NCBI RefSeq assembly: GCF_001194135.2
Contig: NC_069003.1
Location: 33,473,372-33,507,547 of the forward strand
DNA from: Octopus bimaculoides
Lineage: Eukaryota
Reading direction: 5' to 3'
DNA length: 34,176 bases
In this document: one piece after another, positions 1,524 through 32,087 of the stretch
Layout of the letters: every line of letters begins with the position of its first letter
Position numbering within the stretch: position 1 is the first letter of the stretch
The notes under the pieces: model-generated
What the model was told of the DNA's origin: nothing
Database searches by the model: none
The model's input: the letters and a program-made list of their open reading frames with translations, nothing else
Position numbers and translations under genes: made by a program

Positions 1524-2141
1524 AGACAAGATTTTGGTTCCTGAAACCAATCATTTGGTGTCTTCTGACTTTGAAGGTTGGATCTTAATGAATGTTACCA
1601 ATGCTGCCGACTCTTGGACCATCATGCCAGCTTCCAATATGGGTCTTTACCTCAAAATCACTGACATGAGCACAGGTGGGTCTTTTTCGCTCTTTGTTAT
1701 TTACTTACATCTAAATACTCATCTAGTAATACATACATACACACACACATATACTATATAATACACATACATGTAGTTCGTAAGCAAGCTACTTACCACT
1801 CCGTCCAGATATGTTCAAGGAACACATACACACATGCAGCTGAATATATTTATCCGCTTTCATAAATGCTCACATAAACACACACGTATGTTAGCATACA
1901 TACAAGTACACACACACACAGTGTATTTATTGTGTCAGGCTGTCAAAATACAAAATTAGGGTCAGCGTAAGGAGGGTCAAGTTGGCCATTAGTCTATGGG
2001 GAATTTCATGTAGGGGGTCCCTTTTAAGTGTCCCCACCTACCCTGATCTGATGCACTAACCCTCCATTGACTGGTGGCACTCGTAAATCATAATGTCTAT
2101 TTACCTACATACTGTATGTGTGTAGGTAAGGCAGATGAGTT

Positions 2142-2184
<43 letters not shown>

Positions 2185-2222
2185 GTGTGTGTGTGTGTAT
2201 GTGTTGTGTGTGNNNNNNNNNN

Positions 2223-2262
<40 letters not shown>

Positions 2263-3042
2263 GTGTGTGTGTGTGTATGTGTTGTGTGTGTATGTGTGAG
2301 TGTGTGTATGTTGTGTGAGTGTGTGTGTATTTGATCTTCCGTCCCCCAACTGGCAAAGTTGACTTGGCAACAAAATTCCAACTCACCCCACTCCTCTCAC
2401 CCCACCTCATTACTACTGTTTCATCATCCACCCTCTGTTTTTGTGTTTTTTTTTTTTNNNNNNNNNNCCCCCCCCCAGATACATAAACTTCTCTACTTGC
2501 CTCAGTGAGGTTTCCCTTAACATGCAGAGTACCATCACCATCATTGTTTAACATCCGTTTTCCATGCTGGTATGGGTTGGACAGTTTTGAGTGAAGCTGG
2601 CTAACCGGGGAACCATCCAGACTCCAAATTGGCATGGTTTCTACAGATGGATGCCCTTCCTAACGCCAACCACTTCACAGAGTGTGCTGGGTACTTCTTA
2701 CATGTCACCAACACGAGTGTGCTTATGCAGCGTCAGCACAAGTGCATTTTATGTGGCACCAGCACCCGTAAGGGACAAGCCTGTATGTATGGATGACAGC
2801 GATTTCTTCTTGGCTTCACGTGTCTTCTCAAGTACAGCAAATTGCCACAACTCCTGGTCCCAGGGATGATATGCCGGTGCCCCATTAAAAGGACTCTGTG
2901 CACTTTGTAAAGTGGTTGGCATTAGGAAGGGCATCCAGCCATAGAAACCATGCCAAACACAGACAGTTGAAGTCTGGTGCAGCAGTACTGGCTTGCCATG
3001 TCCTGTCAAAATGTCCAACCCATGCCAGCATGCAAAACGGAC

Positions 3043-3076
<34 letters not shown>

Positions 3077-5490
3077 CAACTGCAACAACTACAATAACAA
3101 TAACATGCCAAGAACTGGGGCAGCATGTACACTGGATAATGTAGTGTCCCACTGAGATTACAAGGGACTGAAATTAAGACAGGGTCGTCATGGGTGGAAC
3201 ACTTTGATCACCTGTCTGCTTGATTAACCTGGGGCTAATCAACAATAGCAACAACAACAACACCTCCCACTTTTCTTCAAAACAACCAAACTGCAACAGA
3301 AAGTGTAAGGATTTTTTCGGAGCTATTTTTTTTAGACCTTTTATTTAAAAAAAGAAATTGTCTTTTCCCTTTTTGATTTACATTTATTGACCCATATTTA
3401 CTTTCTTTTCTTTTCTTTCCATTGTTGTAGGTCAAGAATTAAGACCCAACCATATCGGTATTGTAGGACATAGAGGAGACCCCGATAAACAGGCCTTTTT
3501 GGTCTGCTTTTTCAAGATGAGTCAACAGCTTCATGTACGACGAACACGTTCTGCACGCCGGNNNNNNNNNNAGTCAACAGCTTCATGTACGACGAACACG
3601 TTCTGCACGCCGGCAAATGGATACTCGTACAGCAGTCTCACATCGGGATGATTCTCACTGGACGTGGAGACGAACACGTTAGTTATTTATTTTCTATGCC
3701 ATGTTTTTCATTGAGGTTACAGTCATGTGACAAAAGTCATATGGTGGCCCATTATTTAGACCAGAGGTTCCCAACCTTATCTTGGGTTTTGTAATCTTGT
3801 GAGCTACATGGCACTCTCAATAGTGCCAGAGCACCAAAAAGCATCCAGTACATGGTGTAAAATGGTTGGTATTAGGAAGGGCATCAAGCCATAGAAACCA
3901 TATCAAAGCAGACACTGGAGTGCGATGCAGTCCTAGAACCCAGCAGATCTTTGTCAAACTGTCCAACTCACGTCAGTACAGAACATGGATATTAAATGAC
4001 AATGATGATGGTCTATTGAAATATTGGCAGTGGACAACAGAAGTGGATTGGTCAGTTGGTCATGTGAGCCTACCATCCTATGATAATAATAATAATATTG
4101 GTGATTATCAATGTCTTGTTCTACACGTTTCACTCTCTCTCTCTCTCTTCTCTTCTCTTCTAGGACGTTATGTACGACCAGTCTGTCGAAGAAAGACGAT
4201 GTATGTTGACTTTGAAGATTTAGGCTGGCAGGTGAGATTAAAGATTTGTGTGTGTCTGTCATTAACCATTAGTCTTCTCTTTCAATATATCCAACCTTCT
4301 AGATAATTTGGTGCCTAGAGGAGTGATACCAATCCATTTTAGCTTGGCATCATGATCTTTTAGGTTTTATGGTTAAGACGTTTGCTTCCAAACCATTTGG
4401 TTTCTGGTTCAGTCCTGCTGTGCATCACCTTGGACATGTAGAAGTCAAGGCCATGGCTTCATCAGATATATCAAGGCTCGGGACTTAAGTACATGGTCAA
4501 ATTGTCCTCCATAATTTAATGTACTGGGTGAGAATAATAATTTAAATGGTATGATAAATGAAATAATTGATATAACAAATAAAATGTAATAGAAACCATG
4601 CCACATGTGAATAACCACGCTGCATGTTAGTAACTGCGCCACATGTGAGTAACCAATCCATGTATGAGTAACCACGCCACGTGAGTAATCATGTTACATG
4701 TTAGTAACTATGCAGCTCTTCTTCAAAACCCTGCTCTGACTCCCTTCTTGTGTACTTTAATCTCTCATCCCCTAGCATAATGCTGACCCCCACCTCCCAA
4801 TCTCCCCTGGGATTTGTAGATTTGTGAGATGCATGGTGATCTCAGTAGTGCTGGTGGCACAAAAAAAAACCCCCGATTCAATGCATGTTTCAAAGTGGTT
4901 GGTGTTAAGAAGGGTTTCCAACCGTAGAAACCCTGCCAGTGTTGACACCAGAGCATGATGCTGTCCTTGGACTCATGGGATTTGGTCAAACCATCCAACC
5001 CATTCCAGCATGGAATATGGACATAAAATAATGATGATGATGATGATGATGATAAAGAGATACACCTGTTATCAATATTGGAGATTGATTTTGTCAAGTA
5101 TTTCTTTCCTTTCTTTCTCTGTCCACTACAAATTTCTGGCCCCTTTCCTATGTAAGGAATCAATTAAAAGACATAATTATTTCTTCATTTGCCTTTTTCT
5201 TTATTTTCTCCTTTTTTTTTCCCCCACAGAGTTGGATCATTGCACCTGAGGGTTACTCTGCATTCTACTGCGACGGCGACTGCATATTTCCACTCGGTCT
5301 GAATATGAACGCCACAAATCATGCCATTGTACAACTGTTGCTTCACACAGTGAAATCTCAGACAATGCCTAAGCCATGCTGTTCCCCTACCAAACTGAGT
5401 GCCATCTCTGTGCTCTACTTTGATGATAATTCCAATGTCATTCTCAAGAAATATCGAAGTATGAAGGTGAAGGCTTGTGGCTGTCACTAG
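1524..5490 (+). CDS. BMP5-8: BMP5-8 (gbb/60A, BMP5/6/7/8 subfamily) ligand, copy A; 5'-partial. Exons 1524-1675, 3431-3677 (contains a 52-nt assembly artefact), 4164-4231, 5230-5490 (stop)
   Basis: All exons have AG/GT boundaries and compatible phases (2/1/1/0). Translation gives prodomain ...[10 protein letters not shown]...SNMGLYL..., [10 protein letters not shown], furin site RRTR-S, and a 7-cysteine TGF-beta domain ([37 protein letters not shown]...NATNHAIVQ...[40 protein letters not shown]). NATNHAIVQ and [15 protein letters not shown] are BMP5-8 hallmarks. The introns fall at positions matching those I recall for vertebrate BMP7. Confidence 0.93.
2530..3075. mobile_element. Two oppositely oriented copies of SINE-like family C with (ATG)n tail (2530-2760 -, 2900-3075 +). 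Others: 3865-4020, 4885-5055, 10005-10150 (+)
   Basis: Shared GGTTGGCATTAGGAAGGGCATCCAGCC.TAGAAACCATGCCA...TCCAACCCATGCCAGCATG...GATGATGAT. Confidence 0.7.
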
Positions 5491-5960
5491 TGTTCACCCC
5501 ATACCTCTACGTCTTGTAACACTGTATTGCACACACACACACACATTCATTGGANNNNNNNNNNCATTGATGCATGTGTGCATGGGACGGCTGAGTGCAC
5601 TTGCAATGCCACTGTCCTGCTTTTTCTTTTTCTTTTGTGTTTTCAATTTGAGTGTGCAACAAATGTTGCACATTTGCAGGTATCAGGATTTAGTATTTTT
5701 TTATGTACAGTCTCTATGGACATATGATGAATGAATGTGTATGGCTGTGTGTGTGTGTGTGTGTGTGTATGGCTGTATGTGTGTGTGTGAGTATGGCTGT
5801 GTGTGTATGCTTGTATATATCTGTATACCCCTTTCAATTCATGTTACAGTTGGTAAGGTCTTCAAGAATACTGCTGAAAACAACTAAACAAGAACAAATT
5901 AGAAAATATACAGTGTGTGTTTGTAGCACAACATACACACGCATACATATACATACATAC

Positions 5961-9871: not shown

Positions 9872-11420
9872 AAAGCTACTTCTCTCAATACTACCCTCCC
9901 TCAGTTAAGGAGGTCAAGTTTTGCAAGTTACTTGATGATCTCACTAGTGCCAGTGTCTTGTTAAAAAAAAAACAACAAAAAAACCCACCTAGTGCACTCT
10001 GGGAAATGGTTGGCATTCGGAAAGACAGCCAACCATCCATAGAAATCAAGTCAAAGTAGACAGAAGAGTTGGGCATAGTCCACTGGCATGTCAGATCCTA
10101 TCAAGCTGCCCAGCCCACACTCACATGGAAAACAGATGTTGAACAACGAAGATGCGGATGGAGGAAAGACGGATGGTGGAGAGTAGGATGTCAGTGTAAG
10201 ATATTTTTATGGAATTAACTTTGCTTTATCATCATTTTCGAAGGTAGGTTTTGAAGAATTCTGCAAATAAGGTGCAGGTATGGCAGGTATGGTAAAAAGC
10301 TTGCTTCCCAACCACATAGTCCCGGGTTCAGTTCCACTGCATGGCACCTTGGGCAGGTGTTTTCTACTATAGCCTTGGGCTGACCAAAGTCTTGTGAGTG
10401 GATTTGGTAGAGGGAAACTGAAAGAAGCCTGTCGTATATATATATGTGTGTGTGTGTGTGTGTATTTGTCCACCTGTCCGATGTGCTCATGTCCCCCATA
10501 ACTTAGCAGTTCGGCAAAAGATACCGATAGAATAAGCCCTGGGGTCGATTTGTTCGACTAAAAACCCTTCAAAGCGATGCTCCAGCATGGCTGCAGTCAA
10601 ATGATTGAAACAAATGAAAGACTAAAAGAATTGGGCAAATGAAGCAGAAAAGCGAAGGAGTAACAGAATATAACAAAGATATAGAATAGCTGTTCTTGTT
10701 TAACCCCATGTCGGGCTTGGTCTATATAAGTAAAGGTATCGAAACCATGATCATTCTGACTTTCATTTAGCCCCCTTGGCTGTCGTTAGTGAAATTAGCT
10801 TTGTTGCAAACATTCATGGTTCCAGTCTGAGACATTCTTCCTGTAATCTCTGGGGCAGTGACAGGAGGACTGCTCTTCTTTGCCGAGGTAAGTCATAAAA
10901 TATCAAAAGAAAAGAAAGACTACGTTATTCTATGTATCTTTTTTTTCTTTAAAGACGACAAAGTGTGATTTGGGGAAAATTTGGCTGCTATTTTTAGGTG
11001 GTGAAGGGACCGTATAGAGAGGTATAATTATTCGGCGCTGGAATAGAAGACATTGGGAGAGATGAGAGGGGAGAGAACTAGATCGATAGATAGAGACATG
11101 TAGATAAAGAGAGGGGGAGGTAGGTAAAGAGAAACATAAAGAGAGAGGGAGGTAGGTAAAGAGAAACACAGATATAGACACAAAAAGAAAGAGAGAGAAG
11201 AAATAGAAGTAAAGAAAAACAAAGCGAGAGAGAAATTGAGAAATGCAAGGGAGTGAACTGTTGCCTGACTAATTCTCCCGCCAACAACTACTTCACCTGG
11301 TCAGGTGTCACATTTGTGTTTACCTTTACACGTCTTGACACTCTTCCTGTTTACCTTTACGTATCTCGACACTGGTCCCGTTTCAAGGTTGACGGTCACC
11401 TCCACGAGTCTCCAGACAAA

Positions 11421-14400
11421 ATGGTTGTCTCATTTACTGTGTTGTTACTATGTTTAGTCTGGTCACATGCAGTCGAAGGTTCGAAAACAGACAACGGCAA
11501 AAGACCACAAGAGGTTACCACGTCTCTCGGCTCTGTAGTGGTGGTCGGGGCTGGAGTTGCCGGATTAGCAGCGGCCAGGTCCCTCACCAACTCTGGCCAG
11601 TGGGATGTTACTGTGTTAGAAGCACGAAAGGAGCGCTATGGGGGTCGTGTGTGGACCGACCGCATCAACTTTGACCGTGCAAAAGGTAAGAAGAAATTGC
11701 TTCCGCTTCATGTTTGTTGGTCATTTGGTATTTTAATAGATTTAATTAAAGACAGTGAACTAATTATAACAACGGGCAAACAAATCTATACAACCTTCTT
11801 ATGTAAAGCAGATATCGCTATTAAGGAAAACTACCATTCCAGTATCTTCCTATTTTAGCGGCGTAAAATCGTGTTACCTTTTAAGTGTTTTTCTTCTGTC
11901 ACGGCCAGAAAATTACCTTTTTTTAAAAAAGTTTGTTACTGTGTACTTTTTTCTAAAAAGTAAATTAGTCAATAAAATAAAATTGTACAAACAGTTCTTG
12001 TTTTCCATTTAATTTGTCTTTCATCCCGTAAGTTTCTGAAAAATGGGTATTTTTAGATGAAATTTTCTACTGATACCTTTCCGATGGTTTGAATTAGGAT
12101 TATATCGGAATTTAATGTGGTGGGGGAAAATAAAATTACTTTCTCTCCAGCTAGTAATCTAATAACTACTTAGTGCTGAACTTGCTAGAAATAACAGCCA
12201 AATTCTCACATCATATTCTACTAGCTTTAAAAAAAAGTAAGGTTTCTTTTAATAACCTAATCCTGGTGATCTTTGNNNNNNNNNNNNNNNNNNNNNNNNN
12301 NNNNNNNNNNNNNNNNNNNNNNNNNNNNNNNNNNNNNNNNNNNNNNNNNNNNNNNNNNNNNNNNNNNNNNNNNNNNNNNNNNNNNNNNNNNNNNNNNNNN
12401 NNNNNNNNNNNNNNNNNNNNNNNNNNNNNNNNNNNNNNNNNNNNNNNNNNNNNNNNNNNNNNNNNNNNNNNNNNNNNNNNNNNNNNNNNNNNNNNNNNNN
12501 NNNNNNNNNNNNNNNNNNNNNNNNNNNNNNNNNNNNNNNNNNNNNNNNNNNNNNNNNNNNNNNNNNNNNNNNNNNNNNNNNNNNNNNNNNNNNNNNNNNN
12601 NNNNNNNNNNNNNNNNNNNNNNNNNNNNNNNNNNNNNNNNNNNNNNNNNNNNNNNNNNNNNNNNNNNNNNTTCATAGAGTAAAAACCTGTTTCTTTCTTC
12701 TCCACAGAAAATCTGAAGAACTCACTGTAAGAAATATTAACCATCAACTAACTTCACTTAAAGTAAAATATATTCCATTTTAAATTCAAATTACGACAAA
12801 CGTAAATAAACAAACGAAGTTTGCTTTTAGAAGCTTTGAGATGTCTTAGAAAGTTAAAGAAGTGATTTTAAATTCTCAATCGCAGAATAATGCTAATAAT
12901 ATAGCCTGAACAGGATAAAATACCCCTATTTTGCAGAGAAAAGTGTAGGGGGCTAGCTGTGGCCACCTACACTTTTCTCTGCAAAATTAGGGGTAGTTTA
13001 TCCTGTTCAGGCTATAATATTCCATTTTCTTTTTTTTTTTGGTTAATAGGTCTTGAAGCTGATCTGGGAATTGTTATGTTTGATGATGATGACCCTGAGA
13101 ACATGCTGAGTGAATTTTTGGGTCCATTTGAAGTGAGTCCAAAGCGTATTGAATTGAAGCAGTTGATTGATGGTAACACAAACAAAGTCTACCGTGATCT
13201 GGAGTTTGAAAATCTGGCTCAGATCCATCAACAGGTGAGTTATTTGTTACCCATCGCAATCTCCTATACACTAACTACCGAGACATTCAGCTTTGATAAC
13301 CCAAGTAGACATAGACCAACAAAGTGATTATTTCACAGGTTACACTCAACCTAAATATTTTCCTGCATACTTCGTATCTCCCCTCTGCTGTCGTATACCC
13401 ACTCTACACAACAAGGTCAAGCTAACATACCTTGTCACATATTAACATGACATACCAACGACAGGGCTTCTCTATGGTTGCTCGACCTGCTAGAAATAGC
13501 AGTCAAGTCTCCTTGATCGCACCCTACCATTTTTAGAATAACAAGTATGGTCATTGCTGGAATGCCTGGTCAGTTACAGTTAGTTGTATGTCTGTCTGGT
13601 CAGAGTTGACTTGATTTAAACCACAACATACAGTATGGCATAGCTGCCGTATTCCATCACTTCTATACTCTATAACAATGGTTCTCAGCCATTTTCCCCC
13701 TCCGAATCCCTTTCATTCCTATTTCACTAACTTGGACCCTGATAGCCATTCAATGTTTAAAAAATCTTAAATTTTTACAATACTTTTTACAAACAGGGAG
13801 TCAGTCAGTCAGACAGCACTGGCAACAGCCATGCTCTCAAATAGTGTCTTTTATGTTCCAGTGACACGGGAGACAGTCAGGTGGCACTAGCAGTGGCCAT
13901 GCTTGAATAGTGCTTTTTATGTGCCACCGGGCCAGGACCAGTCAGGTGGCACTGACAGCAGCCATGCCCTCAAATGGTGTTTTTTATGTGCCAGTGACAC
14001 GGGAGACAGTCAGGTGGCACTGGCACCAGAAGTATATTATTATATTATGAACTACTATTAAAGACATGTAGTGGTCTGTAAATAATTCTTCCAAATTTTG
14101 GTTCAAGGGCAGCAGTTTTGAGGGGAGGGGAAGTCAATTACATCGACCCTCCCCCCCAATGCTCAATGAAAGACTTTATGATGTTAATTACATAATCACT
14201 GTGTAATCCATTTCCTATAATTGTTTCTCTTTTTCCCCCTTCGACAGCTTTTAATGGCTGCCGTGCAGACTTCCAGTTCACCAACCAAGGACGTTTCATT
14301 GCAAGAAGCCATTGACAATTTATATCGACTGCAACCAGTTTTCAAAGAGACCCTTCCACCAAACGTCTTCACTACTTTGACTTTAGCCAGATACAATCTG

Positions 14401-17400
14401 GCCCCAAAGTTAATCTCTTGCAGGTCCTTGAAATCTCGCTTTAACTTGCTCCCTAATACAGTTATTGAAGAAGGGTTCCAAGAAGTCCTCGACAGGTAAC
14501 ATCTTCCTTTTTTGATTCGTTAATTATTGACAGGGCCATTTGTATATTTGTAGCAGAGATGTCTGACTGATTCAATCACCCAGTACATTACTGGTATGTT
14601 CCTCTCTCATTCCCATGTAGCCCTTTCTCTGCTCTTTTAAATAAATCAGATGAATCCCTTTTCTTCTTTTACTTTTCATGAAAAACATTGTTTAAACATT
14701 TTAGGTTGGTCAGTGGTGTTGAGCTGGAAGAAGCACCGTTAAATCTGGAGATGAATAAGGTAGTTTCTCAGATCAAGATAGCCCAAGTGGACAATACCAG
14801 TAAGGTTTTGGTCCGAACCAAGGATCGGCGCCAGAAGAAAGCAGATGCAGTCATTGTTGCTGTGCCATTAGGGGTTCTCAAAGCCTCCCGAATAGCGTTT
14901 GATCCTGTACTACCTGTTGAAAAACGTGTGGCTTTGAATTCCTTAGGTAAGGTGAAATTTATGACACAAAACAGCTCATTCATAAAAGCAAACCTTTTAA
15001 TAATAATAATAATAATAATAATCCTTTCTACTGGAGATATAAGGCCTCAGATTTGTGGGGAGGGGACTAATTGATTACATTGACCCCAGTGTTTCACTGG
15101 TACTTAATTTATTGACCCCGAAAGGATGAAAGGCAAAGTCGACCATGGCGGAATTTGAACTCAGAAGAGATTGGCCCCCCCCCCCGTACTTGTTTTTTAA
15201 AGTCTGGTACCTATTATCATCTGTCTTGCTGAACTACTAAGTTACAGGGATGTAAACAAACCACCATCGGTTGCAATGTGGGACAAACACAACACTAAGA
15301 CACACACATAGATACATACATTAACACATACACACTCTTATGAGTGGTTTCTTTCTGTTTCTGTCCACGAAATTCTCTCAGGGGCTATAATAGGAAACAA
15401 TTACCCAAGATGCCACACAGTGAGACTGAACCTGGGACCATGTGGTTGGGAAGTAAATGTCTTACCACATGCCACACCAGTGTAATTATGATTTGTGTAC
15501 ATGTGAATCTGTATTTGTCATCTAGTTTCCATTCATGATGTATTAAGTATAATCTTTCTTTCTTTTTTTTCTTCCATTTCTTCACCCAACGTACAGAGGT
15601 TAGCAGTGTGAATAGTGTTGTCTTTAAATTTGCTTCAATATTTTGGCCGAGGGACACAGAACTCTTCCATTTTGCTGTATCCGATATGAGTGAAATTGGA
15701 TTGATGACCACTTGGTTAAACACTGGCTGGTTGTCTCGTCGTAAGGATCCATATTTGACCACCTTTATCCAAGGCAATACTGCTACCAAGTTTGGAAATT
15801 ACTCTGACACCCAACTTAAAACTATCGGTTTGTATCTTAAAACTATTTATTCATATCAAATATCAAAGAACATGGGATCTTCTGTGTTTTGTCTCCGTCT
15901 TACGAATGAGTAACTAGTAACTCTGTTACTTCAAACCTTATTTCCTTGAGGAAATCTTAAAGAAATTTATTCCAGTTTTAACTATTTTATAAAGAGAATA
16001 TTAGTTCTTGTTTAACCCCAGGTCAGCCTCAATTGAGTAAATTCATGATTCATGATCAGAGGTCTTCTGTTTGTGACACTTCATCCTGTTTTTTTCTTTT
16101 GTTATTGGTGGGAGTGTGATTAAGGAAGATTTGGCTGCTATTTCTAGCAGGTTGAGTGATTACATAAAGGCTTTTTTGTTTGCTTCAAGGTGTTGGTCAA
16201 ACAGTAATGTTGTTTGTGTGTCTGACTGTCTGAAAGACAATAACTTCCATACAAAACTCCAATAACTAACAATTCTCTTGACTGTTTCTTCTAGCACTGG
16301 AACGGTTGACAGCAATGTTTCATTTGAAGAATTTGTCCAAAGATGCCATCTTGAGTGTGACATCAAGTAACTGGGCATCTGATCCTTTCAGTCAGGGACT
16401 TCTCTCTTACCCCACCATTGGTGAGTATTCTCATGTCAATTTTAGTTATCTAGATGTGTGCGTGTGTGGGACATGATAGCCTCATCTTGTCATATGATGG
16501 CCATTTCACATTCAACCTGATTAGTTTAATTTACTTTCATCATTACATGTGCATGAATAGTCACTATGCAGCCATCACCATAGAATTTTATAAAATACAA
16601 ATCAGATCAAGAAATGAATAGTGAGACATCAGTATGTCTTTGGATTTAACCCTTGCGTTAATGTATTTATTTTGAGATGCTCTGTGTTTCTTTCAATTAT
16701 TTTAAATATAAATAAGAACTTAGTAAAATAACTTAGTTAACATTAAGCTGGTGTTAGGAACATAAATTGTGACTAAGGTTTGGTGGAAGATTTTAATTCA
16801 AAACTTATGAAAACAAAACATTTGTGCTACAGAGCCAGAGACAGTTTCAGCTGGGTTGGTATCAAAAGGGTTAAGTGATAAATGCTTGCACAACTCTTTT
16901 GCCACTCTCTCAGTCACCAATGACAAGCTTTGCAAGATATCAGGTCCTATTTTAACTATAAGACTAGAAGTCTTGCTGCCTCCATTGAAATGGCGCCAAT
17001 CTGTAAAAATGTTTGTTTGCTTTAGTGAAGAAACATCACTAAGTTTTGTCTCCAAAGATTTAACATATACACCACCCATTACCCCACCTCGCTCTTCTCC
17101 ATGTGTTAATGGTGTTGACTCATTTCACAGACCTTTGATGGCAGAGTTTTTTTTTTATATTTATGTTCTATCTTTTACTTGTCTCAATCATTGAAAAGCG
17201 GCCAGTCTGGGGCACCAGATTCAAAGGTTTAGTCTAGTGGTTCTCAACCGGGATCCATATGACCGTTTTGGGGCTGTTGTAGAAGACACTCGCTCAAAGT
17301 GCCACACCATGGGACTGAACTTGGAACCATGTCGTTGAGAAGCAAACTTCTTACCACACTGCCATGCCTGTACCTATTTCTTTTATTATTTAAGAATAAT

Positions 17401-17797
17401 TTTTGTTATAACGTTGTTGATGCAGGGTTTTTTTTGTTTTTTTTAATCCTTTTCACTCAGCATTCTATATCAGAAATATTGTTTCTCATTTTCATCCTTT
17501 TCTCTCTGACCGAAAGGTATGTCCCAAACCCAGTGGGACGCTGTCTCCAAGCCTATCTGTCCTCACATCTACTTCGCCAATGACTATACTGACTCCACCA
17601 GATTCGGGACCATCCAGGGGGCGTTTAGATCTGGACTCCGAGCAGCTGAACACCTCATGCAAGGGTGCCGTGGCAATGTCCCAGACCCCAAAATGAGATA
17701 TTTAAAAGAACCGAAGGGATCTAGAAAAAGAGGTCACGGAAAAAAGCAGGTCAGAGCAAGCGTAACGGTCAACAGAACCAAGAAAGAAGAACTATGA
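11421..17797 (+). CDS. Flavin-containing amine oxidase family protein (polyamine oxidase/LSD1-like fold), 525 aa, signal peptide, C-terminal KEEL. Exons 11421-11685, 13050-13234, 14248-14495, 14705-14946, 15597-15827, 16295-16420, 17517-17797
   Basis: Seven AG/GT exons join in frame (1578 nt including stop). Motifs appear in family order: VVVVGAGVAGLAAA (GxGxxG), VLEA...GGRVWT, DLG, ADAVIVAVPLGVLK...F.P.LP, F...FW, W.SDPFSQG..SY, FANDYT...GTIQGAFRSGLRAA. The N-terminus MVVSFTVLLLCLVWSHAVEG is hydrophobic. No orthologue name can be assigned from the sequence alone. Confidence 0.88.
12780..13016. mobile_element. Foldback MITE-like element with terminal hairpin (arms 12900-12949 / 12966-13016); related copy at ~31845-32040
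   Basis: Arms are near-perfect reverse complements. The same arm sequence (AAACAAACGAAGTTTGCTTTTAGAAG...GTGATTTTAAATTCTCAA; TATAGCCTGAACAGGATAAA) recurs at 31.85-32.04 kb. Confidence 0.75.
13795..14028. repeat. ~70-bp tandem repeat (about 3.3 units, CAGTCAGGTGGCACT...GCCATGC...TTTTATGTGCCA)
   Basis: Direct repetition is visible. A related motif occurs inside the family C SINE copy at ~2745-2765. Confidence 0.7.
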
Positions 17798-18042
17798 GCT
17801 ATTGTTGATGTTTTAGTATGAGGTGATGGCCAGAATTGGAACTTACTAGTTCTGTGTTATCTTTGTGAATTATGTTACTGATTATTTGATATGTAAATAT
17901 CACCAATGTGTGTATATACATATATAGTGAATTTGTGTGTGTGTATATATGTATATATACTAACTTTGTCTCTCTCTCTCTCTCAATATATAATCCTTTT
18001 TTTTTTTTTTGGATGGTGAAATTCAAAGCACATAATGCTATA

Positions 18043-18048
18043 AATAAA
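18043..18048 (+). promoter_or_regulatory. Candidate polyadenylation signal of the amine oxidase-like gene
   Basis: AATAAA ~245 nt after the stop codon. No transcript evidence. Confidence 0.4.
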
Positions 18049-18129
18049 AGCATATAAGTATTGGGTGGGAAAATCCTCTTGGATAGAAAAAGTCTAAAGC
18101 TGTCTCAAGGATGATTTTTTTTACACTTG

Positions 18130-18590
18130 TTGAACATGGAGGAAGGAGCAGTACCCATAGCTTTTGCAGACCCTGCTTGACCAATAAGACAAATGCCATT
18201 AACGTTCTTTTTTGAACCTTTCTAACTCTAACAGTTGCAAGGAGGAAATTTGAGAGGGTTGGTACTCTGGGAAAGAAGGTTAGGGGTGTTGTGATTAGCG
18301 TAGGGCCTGGGAATTTAGACCCAACAAGGGTGATAAGAAAAGAAAAGTAGAACGGGAGTACCTGAATGGAGATGGCATAGCCCCAGTTAGCTCTGAGGAG
18401 CAGAGGCCATTAGAGAGTAGCAGTAGGAAAAAGCAGAAAGAAGAGGTAGTGTGTCTGTGAGCCAGAAACGAGGGCATATTATCTGTGAGTGATTTTTATG
18501 CCAACCACTTGGATGACTCTTTTTCTGGTTGCAGTTGAAGATGTTTGAGCGCACTGTGGCCTCAACACAGTCTATTACATAAGTTTGCCA
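18130..18590 (-). mobile_element. Decayed non-LTR retrotransposon (CR1/L2-like) ORF2 3' end
   Basis: Frameshifted fragments QKRVIQVVG, LAHRH..SSFC, NGLCSSEL, HP.WV*IPRP and FFPRV..L resemble the C-terminus of CR1/L2-group ORF2. Confidence 0.55.
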
Positions 18591-18594
18591 TTAC

Positions 18595-18947
18595 TCTTTT
18601 TACTCATTTCAGTCATTTGACTGTGGCCATGCTAGAGCACCGCCTTTAGTCGAGCCAATCGACCCCAGGACTTATTCTTTGTAAGCCTAGTACTTGTTCT
18701 ATCGGTGTCTTTTGCCAAACAGCTAAGTTACAGGGACGTACACACACCAGCATCGGTTGTCAAGCGATGTTGGTGGTGGTGGTGGGGGGGGGGAACAAAC
18801 ACAAACATNNNNNNNNNNCATACACATATCTATATATATACATACATACATACATACGATGGGCTTCTTTCAGTTTCCGTCTACCAAATCCACTCACAAG
18901 GCTTTAGTCGGCCTGAGGCTATAGTAGAAGACACTTGCCCAAGGATA
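18595..18947 (-). mobile_element. SINE-like family A copy. Other copies: 10290-10630 (+), 15190-15470 (-), 17140-17365 (-), 23830-24150 (-); fragments at ~24175-24280, 25090-25190, 32200-32260, 4370-4440
   Basis: Recurring blocks GGTTCAGTCCCACTG..GGCACCTTGGGCAAGTGTCTTCTACTATAGCC / GTGGATTTGGTAGACGGAAACTGAAAGAAGCC / central (GT)n / GGGGTCGATT..TCGACTAAAGGCGGTGCT..AGCATGGC...AAAAGA tail. tRNA-like B-box head. Family name not assigned. Confidence 0.75.
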
Positions 18948-22097: not shown

Positions 22098-22123
22098 GTA
22101 ACTAACAACAAAAATATTTGAAA

Positions 22124-23496
22124 ATGGATTCGTTTGAATTTTCAGAAGAAGAAATAAGAAACGAACTTGCGCGGTTTGGGATTAAGGATATCGACCAGAG
22201 TACTTTACGTGAATTTCGAGAAGACCTTCTAAATTTGATGAAAGAAAGTAGTTACAATTCTCTTCAGAATGTTGCTAAATCCACTACAATTTCCCCTTCT
22301 TCCAGCAACTCACCTGTCACTTGTCCAAACTTGTCTCCGTCGTCTCCTCCGGAACCCTTTTCTATAACTTCTCCAACGTTCACATCACCAGCTGCCAAGA
22401 ACGTTGAAGATGCTAAGTCATGTCTAACTCACACAGGTAATTATTGTTCTGTTAATTCCATGGACCCGTCGTCTGTTACCGTTTCTCACAATCGGCCCCA
22501 GAATACAGCTGAAAGTTCCGAACACGTTGCTTATAGAAGCTCTCAGTTGTTCAACAGTGCCAATAAGGTAGATGGTCACTCGGAAATGACACTTAGCCAT
22601 CAATACACACACACTCAACAGCCACTGACTAATCGATCGGAAACAGAACATGAAAAACAGGAGAATCTCCTTCGAACTTTCACCAGAAAAAACATTCCGC
22701 AGGTAAATAGTTTTGATAATCCCAAGAACAAAGAAAACGCTTGGTCTCGTCATATTGCACCTTCGTCATCTTCCTCCTCCCTCTCATCACAAGAATCGGT
22801 CCCCAAACCATCACAAATCGCTTCCATCGACACCGAAAAACCTCCACTGCTAAACACTTATGTTACCAAGAGGAAGGTCTCCCGCAAAGGCCCCGATGGT
22901 AAACGTTATATCGACGAAAGTGAATCTGTGTGTAGTACCAGTACCGCAAGTAGTATCTGTGGCAGTTGCTGTAGCAGTATCGTTGACCCTGCTGAGTACC
23001 AGAATCGTCTGAGAGAGATAACAAACAGAGACGGCTATTTCTATCCGAGATCCCTAAGTTCCTGTGATAGCCGGCCCNNNNNNNNNNNNNNNNNNNNNNN
23101 NNNNNNNNNNNNNNNNNNNNNNNNNNNNNNNNNNNNNNNNNNNNNNNNNNNNNNNNNNNNNNNNNNNNNNNNNNNNNNNNNNNNNNNNNNNNAGTTACTC
23201 CAACACCGCCGAGGTTGAAGAAAAACAGAAAGACAGACCCCGTGAGCAGGTTCCGTGAATTTCAGAACTACTGGAACTTGCACAAGCCTCCCGGTGAAAA
23301 TAATCACAACGCCCTTCGGTGGAGCATTAAAGAGAAAATTGCCAAACACGATGTCATTGGAAGCCGTCCACGGAAAACTTTCGTGCCCAATAATTATGTG
23401 ATACCCTCACAAAACCCGAGACATTCTCTTCGATGGCAGATACGGACTGATCTTGCCTATGGTGTCATGCCAACCGTTGCCAGTTACGACTACTGA
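22124..23496 (+). CDS. HYLS1: Centriolar/ciliogenesis protein HYLS1 (hydrolethalus syndrome protein 1), apparently single-exon CDS interrupted by assembly gap 23078-23192
   Basis: C-terminal HYLS-1 box RKTDPVSRFREFQNYWNLHKPPGENNHNALRWSIKEK...FVPNNYVIPSQNPRHSLRWQIRTDLAYGVMP resembles human KTDRVARYFEYKRDW...PGEDHRKELRWGVRE...[31 protein letters not shown] (recalled). The central KRKVSRKGPDGKRYIDES resembles KRKVLRRKPDGEVLVTDES. ATG at 22124. The frame offset across the gap reflects the estimated N count. Confidence 0.9.
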
Positions 23497-24606
23497 GGAC
23501 GTTCTCTGTGTGTGTAGTTTTGCTTTTAATCAGTTCATTATTTTGTATGATTAGTTGTACAAATTAAGTTGTTGTATATATGCTGATGTATGTATAAGTT
23601 AACTTATATATGTTGATGTATGTACAAATCTTGTAAATGTCTCTAGATGTAGAAATATCTTCACTAGAATGAACATACCTCTTCTCGCTCTTATTTCAAC
23701 CTGGTATTTATTGTTCTATATTTATCAAATGAAATTATGCGTTAGCATACTGCAACACAACACCATTTTAAACTGACACGCACAAATGTGTATATGTCTC
23801 TCTCTATGTATATATACACACATTCTTTTGTTCTTTTACTTGTTTCAGTCATCTGACCGCGGCCTTGCTGGGGCATCGCCTTGAAGGGTTGTAGTTGAAC
23901 AAATCGACCCCAGGACTATTGGTCTTCTTTACTGAACCACTAAGTTACGGGGACGTAAATACACCAACACTGGTTGTCAAGTAGTGATGGGAGGACAAAC
24001 ACAGACACACATATATATTTACAAAGAGCCTTTTTCAATTTCTGTCTACCAAATCCATTCATGAGGCTTTGGTTGGCCTGAGACTGTAGTAGAAGACACT
24101 TGCCCAAGGTACCACGCAATGGGATTGAACCCAGACCCATGTGGTTGGGAAGCGCCTATTCACATACATACATGGCAGACTTCAACAGTTTCAGTCTACC
24201 AGATTCTACTCACAAAGCATCGGCCAACATGAGGTTATTGTAATCAACACATGCCTCAAGTACCATGCAGTGGGATTGAATCTGTCGTGAACGAAGAACG
24301 AAGAAGAATTACATGCGCAATCAGTATATATGTGCAAGCAAACTTGTTGGGTACTCATCCAAGCCTGCACTCATGTATATATTTCTTCATATATATAAAC
24401 TTTTACTTTCTATCTCATTGGCAGAATCGTTAGCACACCAGGCGAAATGCTTAGTGGTATTTTGTCTGTCGCTATGTTCTGAGTTCAAATTCCGCTGAGG
24501 TCGACTTTGCCTTTCATCCTTTTGGGGTCTATCTAATCAACTAGCCCCCTCCTCCAAAATTTCAGGCCTTGTACTGAGAGTAGAAAAGATATATATATAT
24601 ATATGT

Positions 24607-25928: not shown

Positions 25929-26308
25929 GTTTTCAGCAGTATTCTTGAGGACCTTACCAACTGTAACAATGAATTGAAGGACGCATACAGATATATATAC
26001 ATGCATACATACACTCACACACAGACAGCCATACACACACACACAGCCATACACATTCATTCATCATATGTCCATAGAGACTGTACATAAAAAAATACTA
26101 AATCCTGATACCTGCAAATGTGCAACATTTGTTGCACACTCAAATTGAAAACACAAAAGAAAAAGAAAAAGCAGGACAGTGGCATTGCAAGTGCACTCAG
26201 CCGTCCCATGCACACATGCATCAATGTCTTTCGGCTAGCAGGAGTCCAATGAATGTGTGTGTGTGTGTGCAATACAGTGTTACAAGACGTAGAGGTATGG
26301 GGTGAACA

Positions 26309-29300
26309 CTAGTGACAGCCACAAGCCTTCACCTTCATACTTCGATATTTCTTGAGAATGACATTGGAATTATCATCAAAGTAGAGCACAGAGATGGCAC
26401 TCAGTTTGGTAGGGGAACAGCATGGCTTAGGCATTGTCTGAGATTTCACTGTGTGAAGCAACAGTTGTACAATGGCATGATTTGTGGCGTTCATATTCAG
26501 ACCGAGTGGAAATATGCAGTCGCCGTCGCAGTAGAATGCAGAGTAACCCTCAGGTGCAATGATCCAACTCTGTGGGGGAGAAAAAAAGGAGAAAATAAAG
26601 AAAAAGGCAAATGAAGATATAATTATGTCTTTTAATTGATTCCTTACACAGGAAAGGGGCCAGAAATTTGTGACACACACAAATACACACATGCAGATTC
26701 ATGTACACTCAGATATACACATGGATACATAAATGCACACAGATACATATGCAGACACAAATAGAGACATGCATAGATGCACACACACAAATACATAGAT
26801 ACACGCATATAGATATATACATGTACAAACACAGATACATACATACACCATACACACACACACACACACAGTTACGCACATGTACACATGATGGACTCCT
26901 TCAGTTACTGTCGACCACTTTCACTCACCAAAAATGCAGAGAGAAACAAAAGCCTTACCTGCCAACCTAAAGCTTCAAAGTCAACATACATTGTATTTCT
27001 TTGGCAGACTGGTCGTACATAACGTCCTAGAAGAAGAGAACAGAGAGAGAGTGAAACATGTAGAACAAAACATTAATATTCTTTGCTACTCTAAGCACAA
27101 GGCCTGAAATTTTGGGGGAGGGGTGTCAGTCGATCAAATTGACCCCAGTATGCAACTGGTACGAAAGGCAAAGTCGACCTCAGGAGAGGGGAAGGCGTTG
27201 AACTAGCAGAATCATTACTGTGCTGAGCAAAATACTTAGAGGCATGAGTGTATTTGAAATGGAATAATTTAAGAAGAGAGTGGAGTGAACAGTGTGATTG
27301 CAGAATCCCAAAAGCACAAGTTCTGCTGGGGCTGGACATCCTACGAGATTTACAGACAACAGGTGGACCTGCACAATTGCTGAATGGTAACCAAGAGATC
27401 AGAAAAGGCCACTTTGAAGGCCTCCATGATGGTCATTTGAAAGGCCGACTGAATGGGCAACAGTAGTTATGTAATCCCTGTTGTGTGTGTGTATACACTT
27501 AAACCAAACATTACATGAAATGCAGAGCTAGCTCCTTTAGTTTCATATTTAAGACAAAAATTGCCCATTACCCAATGAGATTAAATCTGTGATATTTGAG
27601 GTGCCTCTAAATTACATATTCTTTTCTACTCTAGGCACAAGGCCTGAAATATTTTTGGGGAGGTGGCCAATCGATTAGATTGACCCCAGTACACAACTGG
27701 TACTTAATTTATTGACCCCAAAAGGATGAAAGTCAACCCCGGCAGAATTTGAACTCAGAATATAAAGACGGATGAAATACCGCTAAGCATTTTGCCCGGT
27801 GTGCAAATGTTTCTGCCAGCTCACATTAGTATTATTAGTATTATTATCATTATTACTATTATCATTATATATTGCAATCAATCTTTGAATGAAATCTTTA
27901 GTACATAATGATTAATAGTGACTGCAGAATATTTTAAATTTCAGTGTAGTACATGTTATCATTGGGCCACTATATGACTTTTGTGACATGATTGTAACCG
28001 CAAAGTAGAACAGCAAAAGAAAATGATGACTAACGTGTCCGTCTCCACGTTGACTGAGAATCATCCCGACGTGAGACTGCTGTACGAGTATCCATTTGCC
28101 GGCGTGCAGAACGTGTTCGTCGTACATGAAGCTGTCGACTCATCTTGAAAAAGCAGACCAAAAACGCCTGTTTATCAGGGTCTCCTCTATGTCCTACGAT
28201 ACCGATATGGTTGGGTCTTAATTCCTGACCTACAACAGTGGAAAGAAAAGAAAAGAAAGTAAATATGGGTCAATAAATGGAACAGTAAATCAGAATGGGA
28301 AATAAAGGGTAAGAGAAAAAGACTAAAACATGAGCAGTTAAGGACTTTTAAAGCTCAACACTTTAGCATTTAAACTGGCCATATCCGGCCCAAATATTCT
28401 GTTGTGTGTGTCTGTGTATTTGTTTGTTTCCCACTCACCCATCACTTGACAACTGGTGTTAATTTGTTTTTGTTTATGACCCTGTGACTTGGTGGTTCAA
28501 CAAAAAGAGAATGATAGAGTAAGTACCAGACTTAAAAAATCATAAGTACTGGGGTTGATTCGCTTGGCTAAAACCCTTCAAGGTGGTGCCCCACCTGAGC
28601 TGCAGTTGAAAGACTGAAACATATAAAAAAATAAAAAGATGATTAAATAAAAGAACCAAAAAAAAAAATGTATGAAAATCCCACCTGTGCTCATGTCAGT
28701 GATTCTGAGGTAAAGACCCATATTGGAAGCTGGCATGATGGTCCAAGAGTCGGCAGCATTGGTAACATTCATTAAGATCCAACCTTCAAAGTCAGAAGAC
28801 ACCAAATGATTGGTTTCAGGAACCAAAATCTTGTCTCTGAAACAAAAGAAAAAATTCTTTATTAAAACACAAATGGTTGGAAGCAACATTTTAAAGGAAG
28901 AACAAACGAGAAGCTGTGATGTACATGCCTTTCTTCTTCCAATGAACAGTATTAGTAACATGAGAGAACTAATATAAGCTAGTCAGGTAACTTTGTAATT
29001 AGTCAACCAGTGAAGTACCCCCCACAATGAACTCAACCCTTTTACTTTAACATTGTAGGGGCGGGGTTTTGATTTCCCAATCTCAAGATGGTAAAAAAAG
29101 TTCCCAACTCAAGTGTGTTTAGTAGCTCTGGCTGGATATGTGGTTCTGAATTATACAAAAGCCAAAAGACAGAGACAGGTGAGGGAACAATAGACAGGTG
29201 GATCTGTTTGATGCTCAGCAAAAATGCAAGAAGAAGTCTTTGATGTTTCAAGCCTACACTTTTCTGGATATCTCTACTGATGAAATCCTGAAGTTCAGCC

Positions 29301-32037: not shown

Positions 32038-32087
<50 letters not shown>

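What the first reader, a model, noticed from the sequence alone, without database searches (positions are those of the whole stretch)
11421..17797. Amine-oxidase-fold flavoprotein with signal peptide and KEEL: a candidate ER-lumenal resident
Seen: a hydrophobic ~20-aa N-terminus before the Rossmann motif, four N-glycosylation sequons (NTS, NYS, NLS, NRT), a basic tail, and a terminal ...TKKEEL-stop (KEEL at 17783-17794). Established: KEEL is a functional KDEL-receptor retrieval variant (e.g. PDIA4/ERp72). Animal members of this fold that I know are peroxisomal or cytosolic (PAOX, SMOX), nuclear (LSD1/2), mitochondrial (MAO) or secreted (LAAO, IL4I1), not ER-retained. Inference: an undescribed ER-lumenal branch of the family, possibly acting in redox or secretory quality control by analogy to the unrelated ER flavoprotein FOXRED2/ERFAD.
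Basis: partly seen in the sequence, partly recalled or inferred. Interest (0 to 1): 0.75.

Follow-up and report, generated by a model that had tools for sequence, protein, structure and literature searches.

The report
Mollusc ER-retained flavin amine oxidase homologue
This octopus gene encodes an LSD/polyamine-oxidase-type flavoprotein with a secretory signal peptide and a C-terminal KEEL tag; every full-length mollusc orthologue recovered carries a KDEL-type tag, so it most likely belongs to an undescribed ER-lumen branch of this enzyme family.

Summary
Seven GT/AG exons (11421-17797, +) give a 525-aa protein ending TKKEEL-stop. It is identical to NCBI XP_014779148.1, which is misnamed "lysine-specific histone demethylase 1A". 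The N gap lies inside intron 1 and hides no exon. The gap-free Argonauta orthologue has the same seven-exon plan, and cuttlefish mRNA contigs run straight through the junction.

The protein is a PF01593 amine oxidase whose closest solved relatives are LSD2, LSD1, maize PAO, PAOX and SMOX. All 14 full-length orthologue lineages from cephalopods, gastropods and bivalves end in KDEL, RDEL, REEL or KEEL, and 14 of the 15 sequences checked have an N-terminal hydrophobic leader. None of about 260 other homologues ends this way. The clade is monophyletic (bootstrap 100%) and under purifying selection (dN/dS about 0.10).

New here: the family's flavin-N5 lysine is Ser in octopods and Asn in decapodiforms, one aromatic-cage Tyr is lost clade-wide, and two clade-specific invariant cysteines suggest a lumenal disulfide.

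ER residence is well supported by sequence but was not shown experimentally. Substrate and activity are unknown. The four N-glycosylation sequons are no more than chance. No literature on this clade was found. It is a new variant of a known kind, of moderate interest.

The parts
11421..11685 (+). Exon 1 (265 nt): start codon, signal-peptide-like leader, polar linker, Rossmann beta1, GxGxxG and the EAR..GGR motif
   Evidence: ATG context GACAAAATGG, and no in-frame ATG upstream back to a stop. The Argonauta exon 1 has the same length, 265 nt.
11421..11480 (+). Residues 1-20, MVVSFTVLLLCLVWSHAVEG: predicted cleavable signal peptide. The h-region spans residues 1-15, with a candidate VEG|SKT cleavage site after residue 20.
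   Evidence: Heuristic h-region and (-3,-1) rule scan. It is the top Kyte-Doolittle window. AF2 pLDDT is below 50 and the segment lies outside the fold. 14 of 15 orthologues have an equivalent leader.
11547..11564 (+). GAGVAG dinucleotide-binding (FAD) motif, residues 43-48
   Evidence: these columns are invariant in the 90-sequence family alignment.
11686..13049 (+). Intron 1. It contains the assembly gap 12276-12670 and a near-perfect hairpin repeat at 12895-13021.
   Evidence: No exon is hidden: orthologues align across the junction without an indel, and Argonauta intron 1 is fully sequenced.
13050..13234 (+). Exon 2 (185 nt): the ADLGIVMFDDDDPEN loop, the family's DLGASWIHG..NP motif in strongly diverged form
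   Evidence: same length in Argonauta. Departures A96I, W98M, I99F, G101D and P107M from positions at least 90% conserved in the family.
14248..14495 (+). Exon 3 (248 nt): helical substrate-domain segment
14705..14946 (+). Exon 4 (242 nt): includes the NTS263 sequon and the VAVPLGVLK strand
15597..15827 (+). Exon 5 (231 nt): includes Ser320 (15614-15616), which sits at the position of the flavin-N5 lysine (LSD1 K661), and NYS381 (15797-15805)
   Evidence: LSD1 alignment, position counted by hand. Feature table. The sequon is shared by 8 of 15 orthologues.
16295..16420 (+). Exon 6 (126 nt): includes NLS403 and Leu427 (16402-16404), which sits at the position of LSD1 Tyr761
17517..17797 (+). Exon 7 (281 nt): Cys447 (17558-17560), FANDYT (17573-17590, the family FAGE motif), Gln466, Cys483 (17666-17668), basic disordered tail (17675-17782), KEEL (17783-17794) and TGA stop
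   Evidence: C447 and C483 are invariant in all 15 mollusc sequences. Tail pLDDT is below 50. KEEL fits PROSITE [KRHQSA]-[DENQ]-E-L, as quoted in PMC2140024.
18043..18048 (+). AATAAA, a candidate polyadenylation signal about 250 nt after the stop
   Evidence: Pattern match only.

Best explanation
The gene encodes a soluble FAD-binding protein of the LSD/polyamine-oxidase branch of the flavin amine oxidase family. A short cleavable N-terminal signal peptide takes it into the ER. It folds there, probably with a Cys447-Cys483 disulfide and some N-glycans. KDEL-receptor retrieval of its C-terminal KEEL then keeps it in the ER lumen. It belongs to a mollusc-wide clade that descends from secretory or cell-surface eukaryotic amine oxidases and swapped the hydrophobic C-terminal tail seen in several outgroup homologues for a charged tail ending in KDEL. 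The ancestral activity was most likely oxidation of an amine C-N bond with O2, releasing H2O2 inside the ER. In cephalopods the flavin-N5 lysine and a neighbouring His are replaced, so the octopus protein probably has slowed or altered flavin chemistry, yet it is clearly still functional. Shown here: the gene model, fold, family, signals and their conservation, purifying selection, and the active-site substitutions. Inferred: signal-peptide cleavage, ER residence, the disulfide, FAD occupancy, substrate class and H2O2 output.
For: - **Gene model.** It is identical to XP_014779148.1. Argonauta has the same seven-exon plan, 265/185/248/242/219/126/284 nt, with no gap.
- **mRNA support.** Sepia pharaonis and other cephalopod RNA-seq contigs encode the whole orthologue uninterrupted, with an in-frame stop 9 codons upstream of the ATG (run identity from PMC5541922).
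- **Family.** Pfam Amino_oxidase E=4.8e-54, with no other domain.
- **Fold.** AF2 pLDDT 87.7 and pTM 0.86. Foldseek top hits are LSD2, LSD1, maize PAO, PAOX and SMOX. The mollusc profile hits LSD2 and LSD1 at 1e-59 and the PAOs at 1e-45 to 1e-49.
- **Targeting signals.** All 14 full-length orthologue lineages end in KDEL, RDEL, REEL or KEEL, against 0 of about 260 other homologues. 14 of 15 have h-regions of 10-20 residues. No other transmembrane-like segment is present.
- **Clade.** NJ bootstrap is 100%. Synteny with HYLS1 is shared with Argonauta.
- **Selection.** dN/dS is 0.10 overall and 0.09 in the core. The four KEEL codons have no amino-acid change but do have synonymous changes.
- **Cysteines.** C447 and C483 are invariant in the clade. 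C447 is absent from every outgroup and C483 from the bacterial homologues.
- **Motif function.** The PROSITE motif and ER localisation of KEEL-bearing FOXRED2 are reported in PMC2140024.
Against: - No localisation, glycosylation or activity data exist for any member.
- No trained signal-peptide predictor was available.
- The Bulinus model lacks a leader. That is probably an annotation error, but this was not shown.
- One predicted O. vulgaris isoform (P0282) starts inside the leader and would not be imported.
- Octopus lacks the N5 lysine (Ser320) and has FAND in place of FAGE and Gln in place of the HGA histidine. FAD binding or oxidase activity could therefore be impaired.
- The sequon count is at chance level.
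- PMC2140024 also notes that some proteins with KDEL-like ends stay in the ER without them. It notes too that some PROSITE-matching motifs retain poorly.
- dS is near saturation (1.7), so the omega value is approximate.
Confidence: 0.72

Rival explanations
1. In cephalopods the protein is a pseudo-oxidase. It still resides in the ER lumen, but as a flavin-binding or even flavin-free scaffold or chaperone-like factor without amine oxidase turnover. This rival concerns activity, not location.
For: The LSD1 K661 equivalent is Ser in 4 octopods and Asn in 2 decapodiform sequences, whereas it is Lys in all outgroups and most other molluscs. His466 is Gln in all cephalopods. The genus Octopus also has FAND for FAGE and a DDDD loop in place of the SWIHG motif. 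The Tyr761 equivalent is lost clade-wide.
Against: Strong purifying selection acts on the core (omega 0.09). 44 of 55 family-conserved positions are retained, similar to the Lys-retaining mollusc orthologues at 41-47. GxGxxG, the Glu67 region and GGR are intact. From my own knowledge, Lys mutants of mouse PAO and LSD1 K661A on nucleosomes retain partial activity, so loss of Lys is not proof of inactivity.
Confidence: 0.3
2. It is essentially a secreted or extracellular amine oxidase, like maize PAO or the outgroup surface enzymes. The xDEL end only delays export or allows regulated release.
For: The nearest eukaryotic relatives carry signal peptides, and several of them have hydrophobic GPI-like tails, which points to an extracellular ancestry. 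Some KDEL proteins reach the cell surface (for example PDIA1, title of PMC11342103).
Against: The tetrapeptide is kept in 14 orthologue lineages spanning cephalopods, gastropods and bivalves, and it always fits the PROSITE motif. There are no non-synonymous changes in KEEL between Octopus and Argonauta despite synonymous ones.
Confidence: 0.12
3. The leader is an uncleaved signal anchor, giving a type II ER membrane protein with a lumenal catalytic domain.
For: The n-region has no basic residue and cleavage was not tested. The (-3,-1) candidates are only heuristic.
Against: h-regions are 10-20 residues, mostly 12-17, which is short for a membrane span. A KDEL-type tag is the hallmark of soluble residents. 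The leader sequence itself evolves fast (omega about 0.8), as signal peptides typically do.
Confidence: 0.08
4. It is what the databases call it: an LSD1/KDM1-type nuclear histone demethylase.
For: The best sequence and structure matches are the amine oxidase domains of LSD1 and LSD2. NCBI names it so.
Against: There is no SWIRM domain, no Tower insertion and no zinc finger; Pfam finds only Amino_oxidase. It has a signal peptide plus KEEL. K661 and Y761 are replaced. The match to LSD1 covers only the oxidase domain, in two pieces.
Confidence: 0.01
5. It is a gene-model or assembly artefact. The gap hides an exon, or exon 1 or exon 7 belongs to another gene.
For: A 395-N gap lies between exons 1 and 2. 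The window has 14 gaps and a large inverted duplication.
Against: A gap-free Argonauta locus has the same exon lengths and phases. Independent O. vulgaris and O. sinensis models have the same ends. The Sepia mRNA is collinear. AF2 folds the spliced product with high confidence.
Confidence: 0.03

Closest known systems
LSD2/KDM1B and LSD1/KDM1A amine oxidase domains
   Same: Closest solved relatives by profile (E about 1e-59) and by fold (Foldseek E about 1e-36, TM 0.72). Same two-domain FAD/substrate architecture. Thr at the position of LSD1 T810.
   Different: No SWIRM, Tower or zinc-finger modules. Secretory leader and KEEL in place of nuclear targeting. K661 becomes Ser and Y761 becomes Leu. 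The database name is therefore misleading.
Polyamine oxidases (maize PAO, murine PAOX, human SMOX)
   Same: Same subfamily. Stand-alone oxidase of about 500 aa (TM 0.78-0.80 normalised to the target; E 1e-45 to 1e-49). From my own knowledge, maize PAO is also a signal-peptide-bearing glycoprotein.
   Different: Those enzymes are apoplastic, peroxisomal or cytosolic (own knowledge). None is KDEL-tagged. They keep the N5 lysine; the K300M mutant structures 3kpf, 3ku9 and 3l1r are listed. Substrate-tunnel residues were not compared here.
Eukaryotic secretory-pathway homologues (Syssomonas, Pterocystis, an ENA eukaryotic contig, Dimorphilus, Gordionus)
   Same: Nearest non-mollusc relatives in the exhaustive profile search (222-301 bits). 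N-terminal leaders are present. The extra residue in the R-x-x-R-Y-GGR motif is shared with Gordionus, the ENA sequence and Logan133.
   Different: Four of them end in a hydrophobic, GPI-anchor-like tail and Gordionus in a polar tail; none has a charged tail with xDEL. All keep the N5 lysine and most keep the aromatic residue at 427.
FOXRED2/ERFAD and PCYOX1 (animal ER flavoproteins with KDEL-like ends)
   Same: FAD proteins with a signal peptide and a C-terminal KEEL (FOXRED2) or KTEL (PCYOX1), shown in the ER by Raykhel et al. 2007 (PMC2140024). They are analogues for how the protein is kept in the ER.
   Different: Different families: neither appears among the Pfam matches of this protein, and only the Argonauta orthologue gave a weak sub-threshold Prenylcys_lyase hit. 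Neither is an amine oxidase. There is no evidence that this protein shares ERFAD's ERAD role.
Bacterial flavin monoamine/polyamine oxidase family proteins
   Same: 27-30% identity over about 85% of the length. They are the bulk of database neighbours and have the same motifs.
   Different: They have twin-arginine-like leaders (for example MWDRRAFLKF), no xDEL, and keep Lys, Tyr, the SWIHG motif and FAGEAT.

Membership tests
Flavin-containing amine oxidoreductase (Pfam PF01593) | Profile match above the curated threshold over the whole domain | tested here: met
   184.8 bits against a cut-off of 19.8, E=4.8e-54. Orthologues score 176-211 bits.
Flavin-containing amine oxidoreductase (Pfam PF01593) | N-terminal beta-alpha-beta FAD motif GxGxxG, an acidic residue at the end of beta2, and GGR | tested here: met
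   GAGVAG 43-48 and LEARKERYGGRV 66-77. These columns are invariant in the family.
Flavin-containing amine oxidoreductase (Pfam PF01593) | Two-domain amine-oxidase fold | tested here: met
   AF2 pLDDT 87.7. Foldseek probability 1.00 to LSD2, LSD1 and PAO.
Flavin-containing amine oxidoreductase (Pfam PF01593) | Conserved lysine bridging to flavin N5 (LSD1 K661, maize PAO K300) | tested here: not met
   Ser320 in the three Octopus species and Argonauta, and Asn in decapodiforms. It is Lys in 109 non-mollusc homologues at 90% or more.
Flavin-containing amine oxidoreductase (Pfam PF01593) | C-terminal FAD motif FAGE..T and T-V-H-G-A | tested here: inconclusive
   The octopus has FANDYT and TIQGA. 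Other molluscs have FAGE[HY]T and T[LV]HGA. The effect on FAD binding is unknown.
Flavin-containing amine oxidoreductase (Pfam PF01593) | Bound FAD and amine-dependent O2 reduction to H2O2 | not testable with these tools
   This needs recombinant protein.
Soluble ER residents retrieved by the KDEL receptor | Extreme C-terminal tetrapeptide fitting [KRHQSA]-[DENQ]-E-L | tested here: met
   KEEL is followed directly by TGA. The motif is as quoted in PMC2140024. The chance of a random fit is about 4e-4.
Soluble ER residents retrieved by the KDEL receptor | The motif is conserved in orthologues and absent from paralogues or outgroups | tested here: met
   14 orthologue lineages have it against 0 of about 260 others. 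dN=0 in the last four codons.
Soluble ER residents retrieved by the KDEL receptor | Cleavable N-terminal signal peptide and no other membrane span | tested here: inconclusive
   The heuristic h-region and (-3,-1) scan is positive in 14 of 15 sequences. No other transmembrane-like window is present. No trained predictor was available, and cleavage was not shown.
Soluble ER residents retrieved by the KDEL receptor | Observed ER-lumenal localisation that depends on the tag | not testable with these tools
   An experiment is required.
LSD1/KDM1 histone demethylases (the database name) | SWIRM domain N-terminal to the oxidase domain | tested here: not met
   There is no PF04433 hit in this protein or its orthologues, and only 36 residues precede the Rossmann strand.
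LSD1/KDM1 histone demethylases (the database name) | Tower insertion (LSD1) or zinc fingers (LSD2) | tested here: not met
   The 525-aa protein aligns to the oxidase domain only. LSD1 is matched in two pieces on either side of its Tower.
LSD1/KDM1 histone demethylases (the database name) | Catalytic K661 and substrate-positioning Y761 | tested here: not met
   Ser320 and Leu427 occupy these positions.
Polyamine oxidases (PAO/SMOX/PAOX) | Substrate-tunnel residues and activity on spermine, spermidine or their acetyl derivatives | not tested
The family-conserved W98, G101 and Y427 are all changed in the clade, which argues for a different substrate.

The most novel reading that the evidence does not exclude
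Molluscs possess a dedicated ER-lumenal amine oxidase of the LSD/PAO type. It could generate H2O2 inside the ER to feed peroxidase- or peroxiredoxin-driven oxidative folding of their heavy secretory load. Alternatively it could act, LSD-like, on lysine or methyl-lysine side chains of secretory proteins. Cephalopods would then have converted it, through loss of the N5 lysine, into an enzyme with different flavin chemistry, for example a dehydrogenase that reacts poorly with O2.
Probability: 0.15. Interest if true: 0.8.

Novelty: new variant of a known kind. Interest (0 to 1): 0.5.

Why it matters
The recognised ER flavoenzymes, from my own knowledge, are thiol oxidases (ERO1, QSOX) and ERFAD. 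A 2025 review of the ER redoxome mentions no amine oxidase or polyamine chemistry. A conserved KDEL-tagged LSD/PAO-type protein would add a new reaction class, and a possible new H2O2 source, to the ER lumen of a whole phylum.

It also gives a clean natural example of enzyme relocalisation. Related eukaryotic enzymes carry a leader and in several cases a GPI-like tail, whereas the mollusc clade carries KDEL. The subsequent active-site drift in cephalopods is a second step in that history.

Practically, the automated names "lysine-specific histone demethylase 1A" and "homolog 3" for these proteins are wrong. They would mislead epigenetic gene inventories in cephalopods.

Tried and rejected
- **Literature.** Four searches found nothing about this clade. 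They covered amine oxidase + KDEL + ER + flavin; polyamine oxidase + ER retention; the Pfam family name + mollusc; and the NCBI and UniProt accessions of six orthologues. A search for the database name + octopus also found nothing, and one search failed on syntax.
- **Sequon count as evidence.** Rejected, because it is at chance level.
- **Bacterial origin by horizontal transfer.** Considered because bacterial proteins dominate the first search. The exhaustive profile search instead puts eukaryotic secretory homologues closest, and the gene has seven conserved introns. The deeper branching is unresolved (bootstrap 0.125 for a eukaryote-only group).
- **Cys447-Cys483 distance.** Model coordinates are not exposed to the script environment, so the distance and the pocket could not be measured.
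- **Histone demethylase reading.** Rejected on domain content.
- **Hidden exon in the gap.** Rejected.
Full report
**What is in the sequence.** Reading 11000-18200 and splicing seven exons gives a 1578-nt ORF. The exons are 11421-11685, 13050-13234, 14248-14495, 14705-14946, 15597-15827, 16295-16420 and 17517-17797, and all have AG/GT borders. The 525-aa product starts MVVSFTVLLLCLVWSHAVEG, has GAGVAG at residues 43-48 and ends NRTKKEEL-stop.

The four sequons exist, but four is what shuffled sequences of this composition give (mean 3.55, P=0.49). Only NYS381 is widely shared, in 8 of 15 orthologues. The tail is basic (13 K/R against 4 D/E in the last 40 residues) and disordered in the model. 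The ATG at 11421 is the first in-frame ATG after a stop and has an A at -3 and a G at +4.

**The gap.** The N run 12276-12670 lies entirely inside intron 1 (11686-13049). Exons 1 and 2 join in phase 1 to make Gly89. Three results show that nothing is missing.
- The Argonauta hians orthologue (locus L005, no N in the gene) has exons of 265, 185, 248, 242, 219, 126 and 284 nt. That is the same plan and the same phases.
- Intron-free RNA-seq contigs of about 1.9 kb encode a complete cephalopod orthologue (P0003). It aligns across the junction without an indel. One of the runs, SRR3011300, is Sepia pharaonis according to PMC5541922.
- The spliced product is identical to NCBI XP_014779148.1 / UniProt A0A0L8GPJ5. 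Independent O. vulgaris and O. sinensis models have the same ends.

In the Sepia mRNA contigs an in-frame stop lies nine codons upstream of the ATG. The hydrophobic leader is therefore the true N-terminus of the ORF.

**What kind of protein.** Pfam finds Amino_oxidase (PF01593, E=4.8e-54) plus generic Rossmann models and nothing else. The AlphaFold2 model built on a 90-sequence alignment is confident (pLDDT 87.7, pTM 0.86). Only residues 1-22 and about 490-525 are disordered. Foldseek against the PDB ranks the LSD2 and LSD1 oxidase domains, maize polyamine oxidase, murine PAOX and human SMOX first. A profile of 15 mollusc sequences gives the same order (LSD2/LSD1 1e-59, PAOs 1e-45 to 1e-49, MAO 1e-31, LAAO 1e-27). 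So this is a stand-alone member of the LSD/PAO branch. It has no SWIRM, Tower or zinc-finger module. The database names "lysine-specific histone demethylase 1A" and "homolog 3" are therefore not justified.

**The targeting signals are conserved.** The word-indexed search found the Octopus, Argonauta, two cephalopod-transcript and Patella orthologues. An exhaustive HMMER profile search of 1.84 billion representatives added Bulinus, Haliotis, Sinanodonta, Ylistrum, Ostrea, Argopecten, Pinctada (a fragment) and one more transcript.

Every full-length member ends in a tetrapeptide that fits the PROSITE ER motif [KRHQSA]-[DENQ]-E-L, as quoted in PMC2140024.
- KEEL: three Octopus species and Argonauta.
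- RDEL: Sepia and Ostrea.
- REEL: the second cephalopod transcript.
- KDEL: two Patella species, Bulinus, Haliotis, Sinanodonta, Ylistrum, Argopecten and the extra transcript.

Among the 281 proteins held at that point, no sequence outside this clade ended in [DE]EL. Fourteen of 15 have an uncharged hydrophobic stretch of 10-20 residues at the N-terminus, followed by (-3,-1)-rule sites. Only the Bulinus draft model lacks one. The octopus protein has no other membrane-like segment.

**Phylogeny and ancestry.** The clade is monophyletic in a neighbour-joining tree (200 bootstraps, 100%), and so are the cephalopods. HYLS1 lies downstream on the same strand in both Octopus and Argonauta, which supports orthology.

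The nearest outgroups are eukaryotic proteins with leaders. Syssomonas, Pterocystis, an ENA eukaryotic contig and the annelid Dimorphilus end in a hydrophobic, GPI-anchor-like tail, and Gordionus does not. None has xDEL. The simplest history is a secretory or surface amine oxidase that became ER-retained before cephalopods, gastropods and bivalves diverged. The order of the deeper branches is not resolved.

**Selection.** Octopus against Argonauta gives dN=0.18, dS=1.71 and omega=0.10 over 515 codons, with 0.09 in the core. The leader (0.8) and the tail (0.23) are more relaxed. The four KEEL codons differ only synonymously. dS is close to saturation, so omega is approximate, but the protein is clearly maintained.

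**The active site is not ordinary.** I counted through the HMMER alignment to LSD1. LSD1 K661 is the lysine that, by established knowledge of this family, contacts flavin N5 through a water; it corresponds to K300 in maize PAO, whose K300M structures appear. It aligns with Ser320.
- A feature table shows Lys in every outgroup and in six mollusc lineages. It is Arg in Patella and one transcript, Asn in the two decapodiform sequences and Ser in all four octopods.
- The LSD1 Y761 position is non-aromatic in the whole clade except the decapodiforms, which have Phe.
- The family HGA histidine is Gln in cephalopods.
- The genus Octopus alone has FAND in place of FAGE and a DDDD loop in place of SWIHG.
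- Of 55 positions that are at least 90% conserved in 109 non-mollusc homologues, mollusc sequences keep 41-47. W98, G101 and Y427 are changed throughout the clade.
- Two cysteines, C447 and C483, are invariant in all 15 mollusc sequences. C447 is found in no outgroup, and C483 is absent from the bacterial homologues though some eukaryotic outgroups align a Cys there. I infer a lumenal disulfide.

**Most likely mechanism.** The protein is imported co-translationally through a cleaved signal peptide, folds and loads FAD in the lumen, and is retrieved from post-ER compartments by the KDEL receptor through KEEL. In most molluscs it probably oxidises an amine with O2 and releases H2O2 in the ER. 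The remodelled pocket suggests that the substrate differs from those of its relatives.

In octopus the loss of the N5 lysine and the neighbouring changes make slow, altered or absent oxidase chemistry a serious possibility (I put it at about 0.3). Purifying selection shows the protein still does something.

**Comparison with what is known.** Raykhel et al. 2007 (PMC2140024) showed ER localisation for KEEL-bearing FOXRED2 and for KTEL-bearing prenylcysteine oxidase PCYOX1. Animal FAD oxidases with KDEL-like ends therefore exist, but they belong to other families. I found no report of an ER-retained PF01593 amine oxidase. Five literature searches returned nothing relevant. A 2025 ER-redoxome review never mentions amine oxidases or polyamines.

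The sequences are already public as unnamed or misnamed predictions. What is new is the recognition of a conserved ER-tagged clade and its cephalopod active-site changes. This is a new variant of a known kind, of moderate interest.

**Limits.** There was no trained signal-peptide or GPI predictor, no expression data for O. bimaculoides itself, no coordinates for pocket or disulfide geometry, and no experiments. A predicted O. vulgaris isoform that starts inside the leader (P0282) hints at a possible non-imported form, or at an annotation artefact.

Noticed in passing
window 116-5794 (+) versus 25997-30389 (-): A large inverted duplication (arms 88-99% identical) flanks the amine oxidase and HYLS1 genes. 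Each arm carries a TGF-beta/BMP-family gene. The propeptide exon lies at about 1494-1702 and 28658-28866. An intact mature-domain exon ending ...KACGCH* is identical in amino acids in both copies (5101-5490 + and 26309-26692 -). Given the many assembly gaps, this could be a real inverted gene pair or an assembly artefact. The Argonauta locus has an enoyl-CoA hydratase gene upstream instead.
   Followed up: partly
window 22118-23496 (+): The downstream neighbour is a HYLS1 (hydrolethalus syndrome protein 1) gene. HYLS1_C scores E=1e-25 at 23215-23496, after a long Ser-rich ORF interrupted by the gap 23078-23192. The same gene order and strand occur in Argonauta.
   Followed up: partly
window 13816-14029 (intron 2): A 68-bp tandem repeat, 3.2 copies, 74% matches.
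   Followed up: no
window 12895-13021 (intron 1, just after the gap): A near-perfect hairpin. The outer arms are 38 nt (92% complementary) and the inner arms 31 nt, separated by 8 nt, which looks like a MITE. A related copy lies at 31950-32042.
   Followed up: no
window 10290-10470, 15383-15467 (intron 4), 18822-18944, 23995-24153; also 16708-16874 (intron 6) versus 29478-29644: Dispersed short repeats, 77-88% identical and in both orientations. They are probably SINE-like elements populating the introns and flanks.
   Followed up: no
P0282 (Octopus vulgaris CAI9739531.1), orthologue of window exon 1: A predicted 515-aa isoform starts MLVWSHAVEG, inside the leader. It would lack a functional signal peptide. 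This is either a possible cytosolic isoform or an annotation artefact.
   Followed up: no
P0127, P0267 and related proteins (Argopecten irradians); P0266 (Bulinus truncatus): Scallops carry many tandem or variant copies of the KDEL-tagged oxidase: 18 cluster members on a 1-Mb contig, some fused to unrelated N-terminal sequence. Bulinus has a 1323-aa fusion model ending in the same KDEL tail. These may reflect lineage-specific expansion or model fusions.
   Followed up: no
window 11060-11240 (just upstream of the start codon): A purine-rich AG/GA low-complexity tract that includes a 32-bp unit repeated twice (11104-11168).
   Followed up: no
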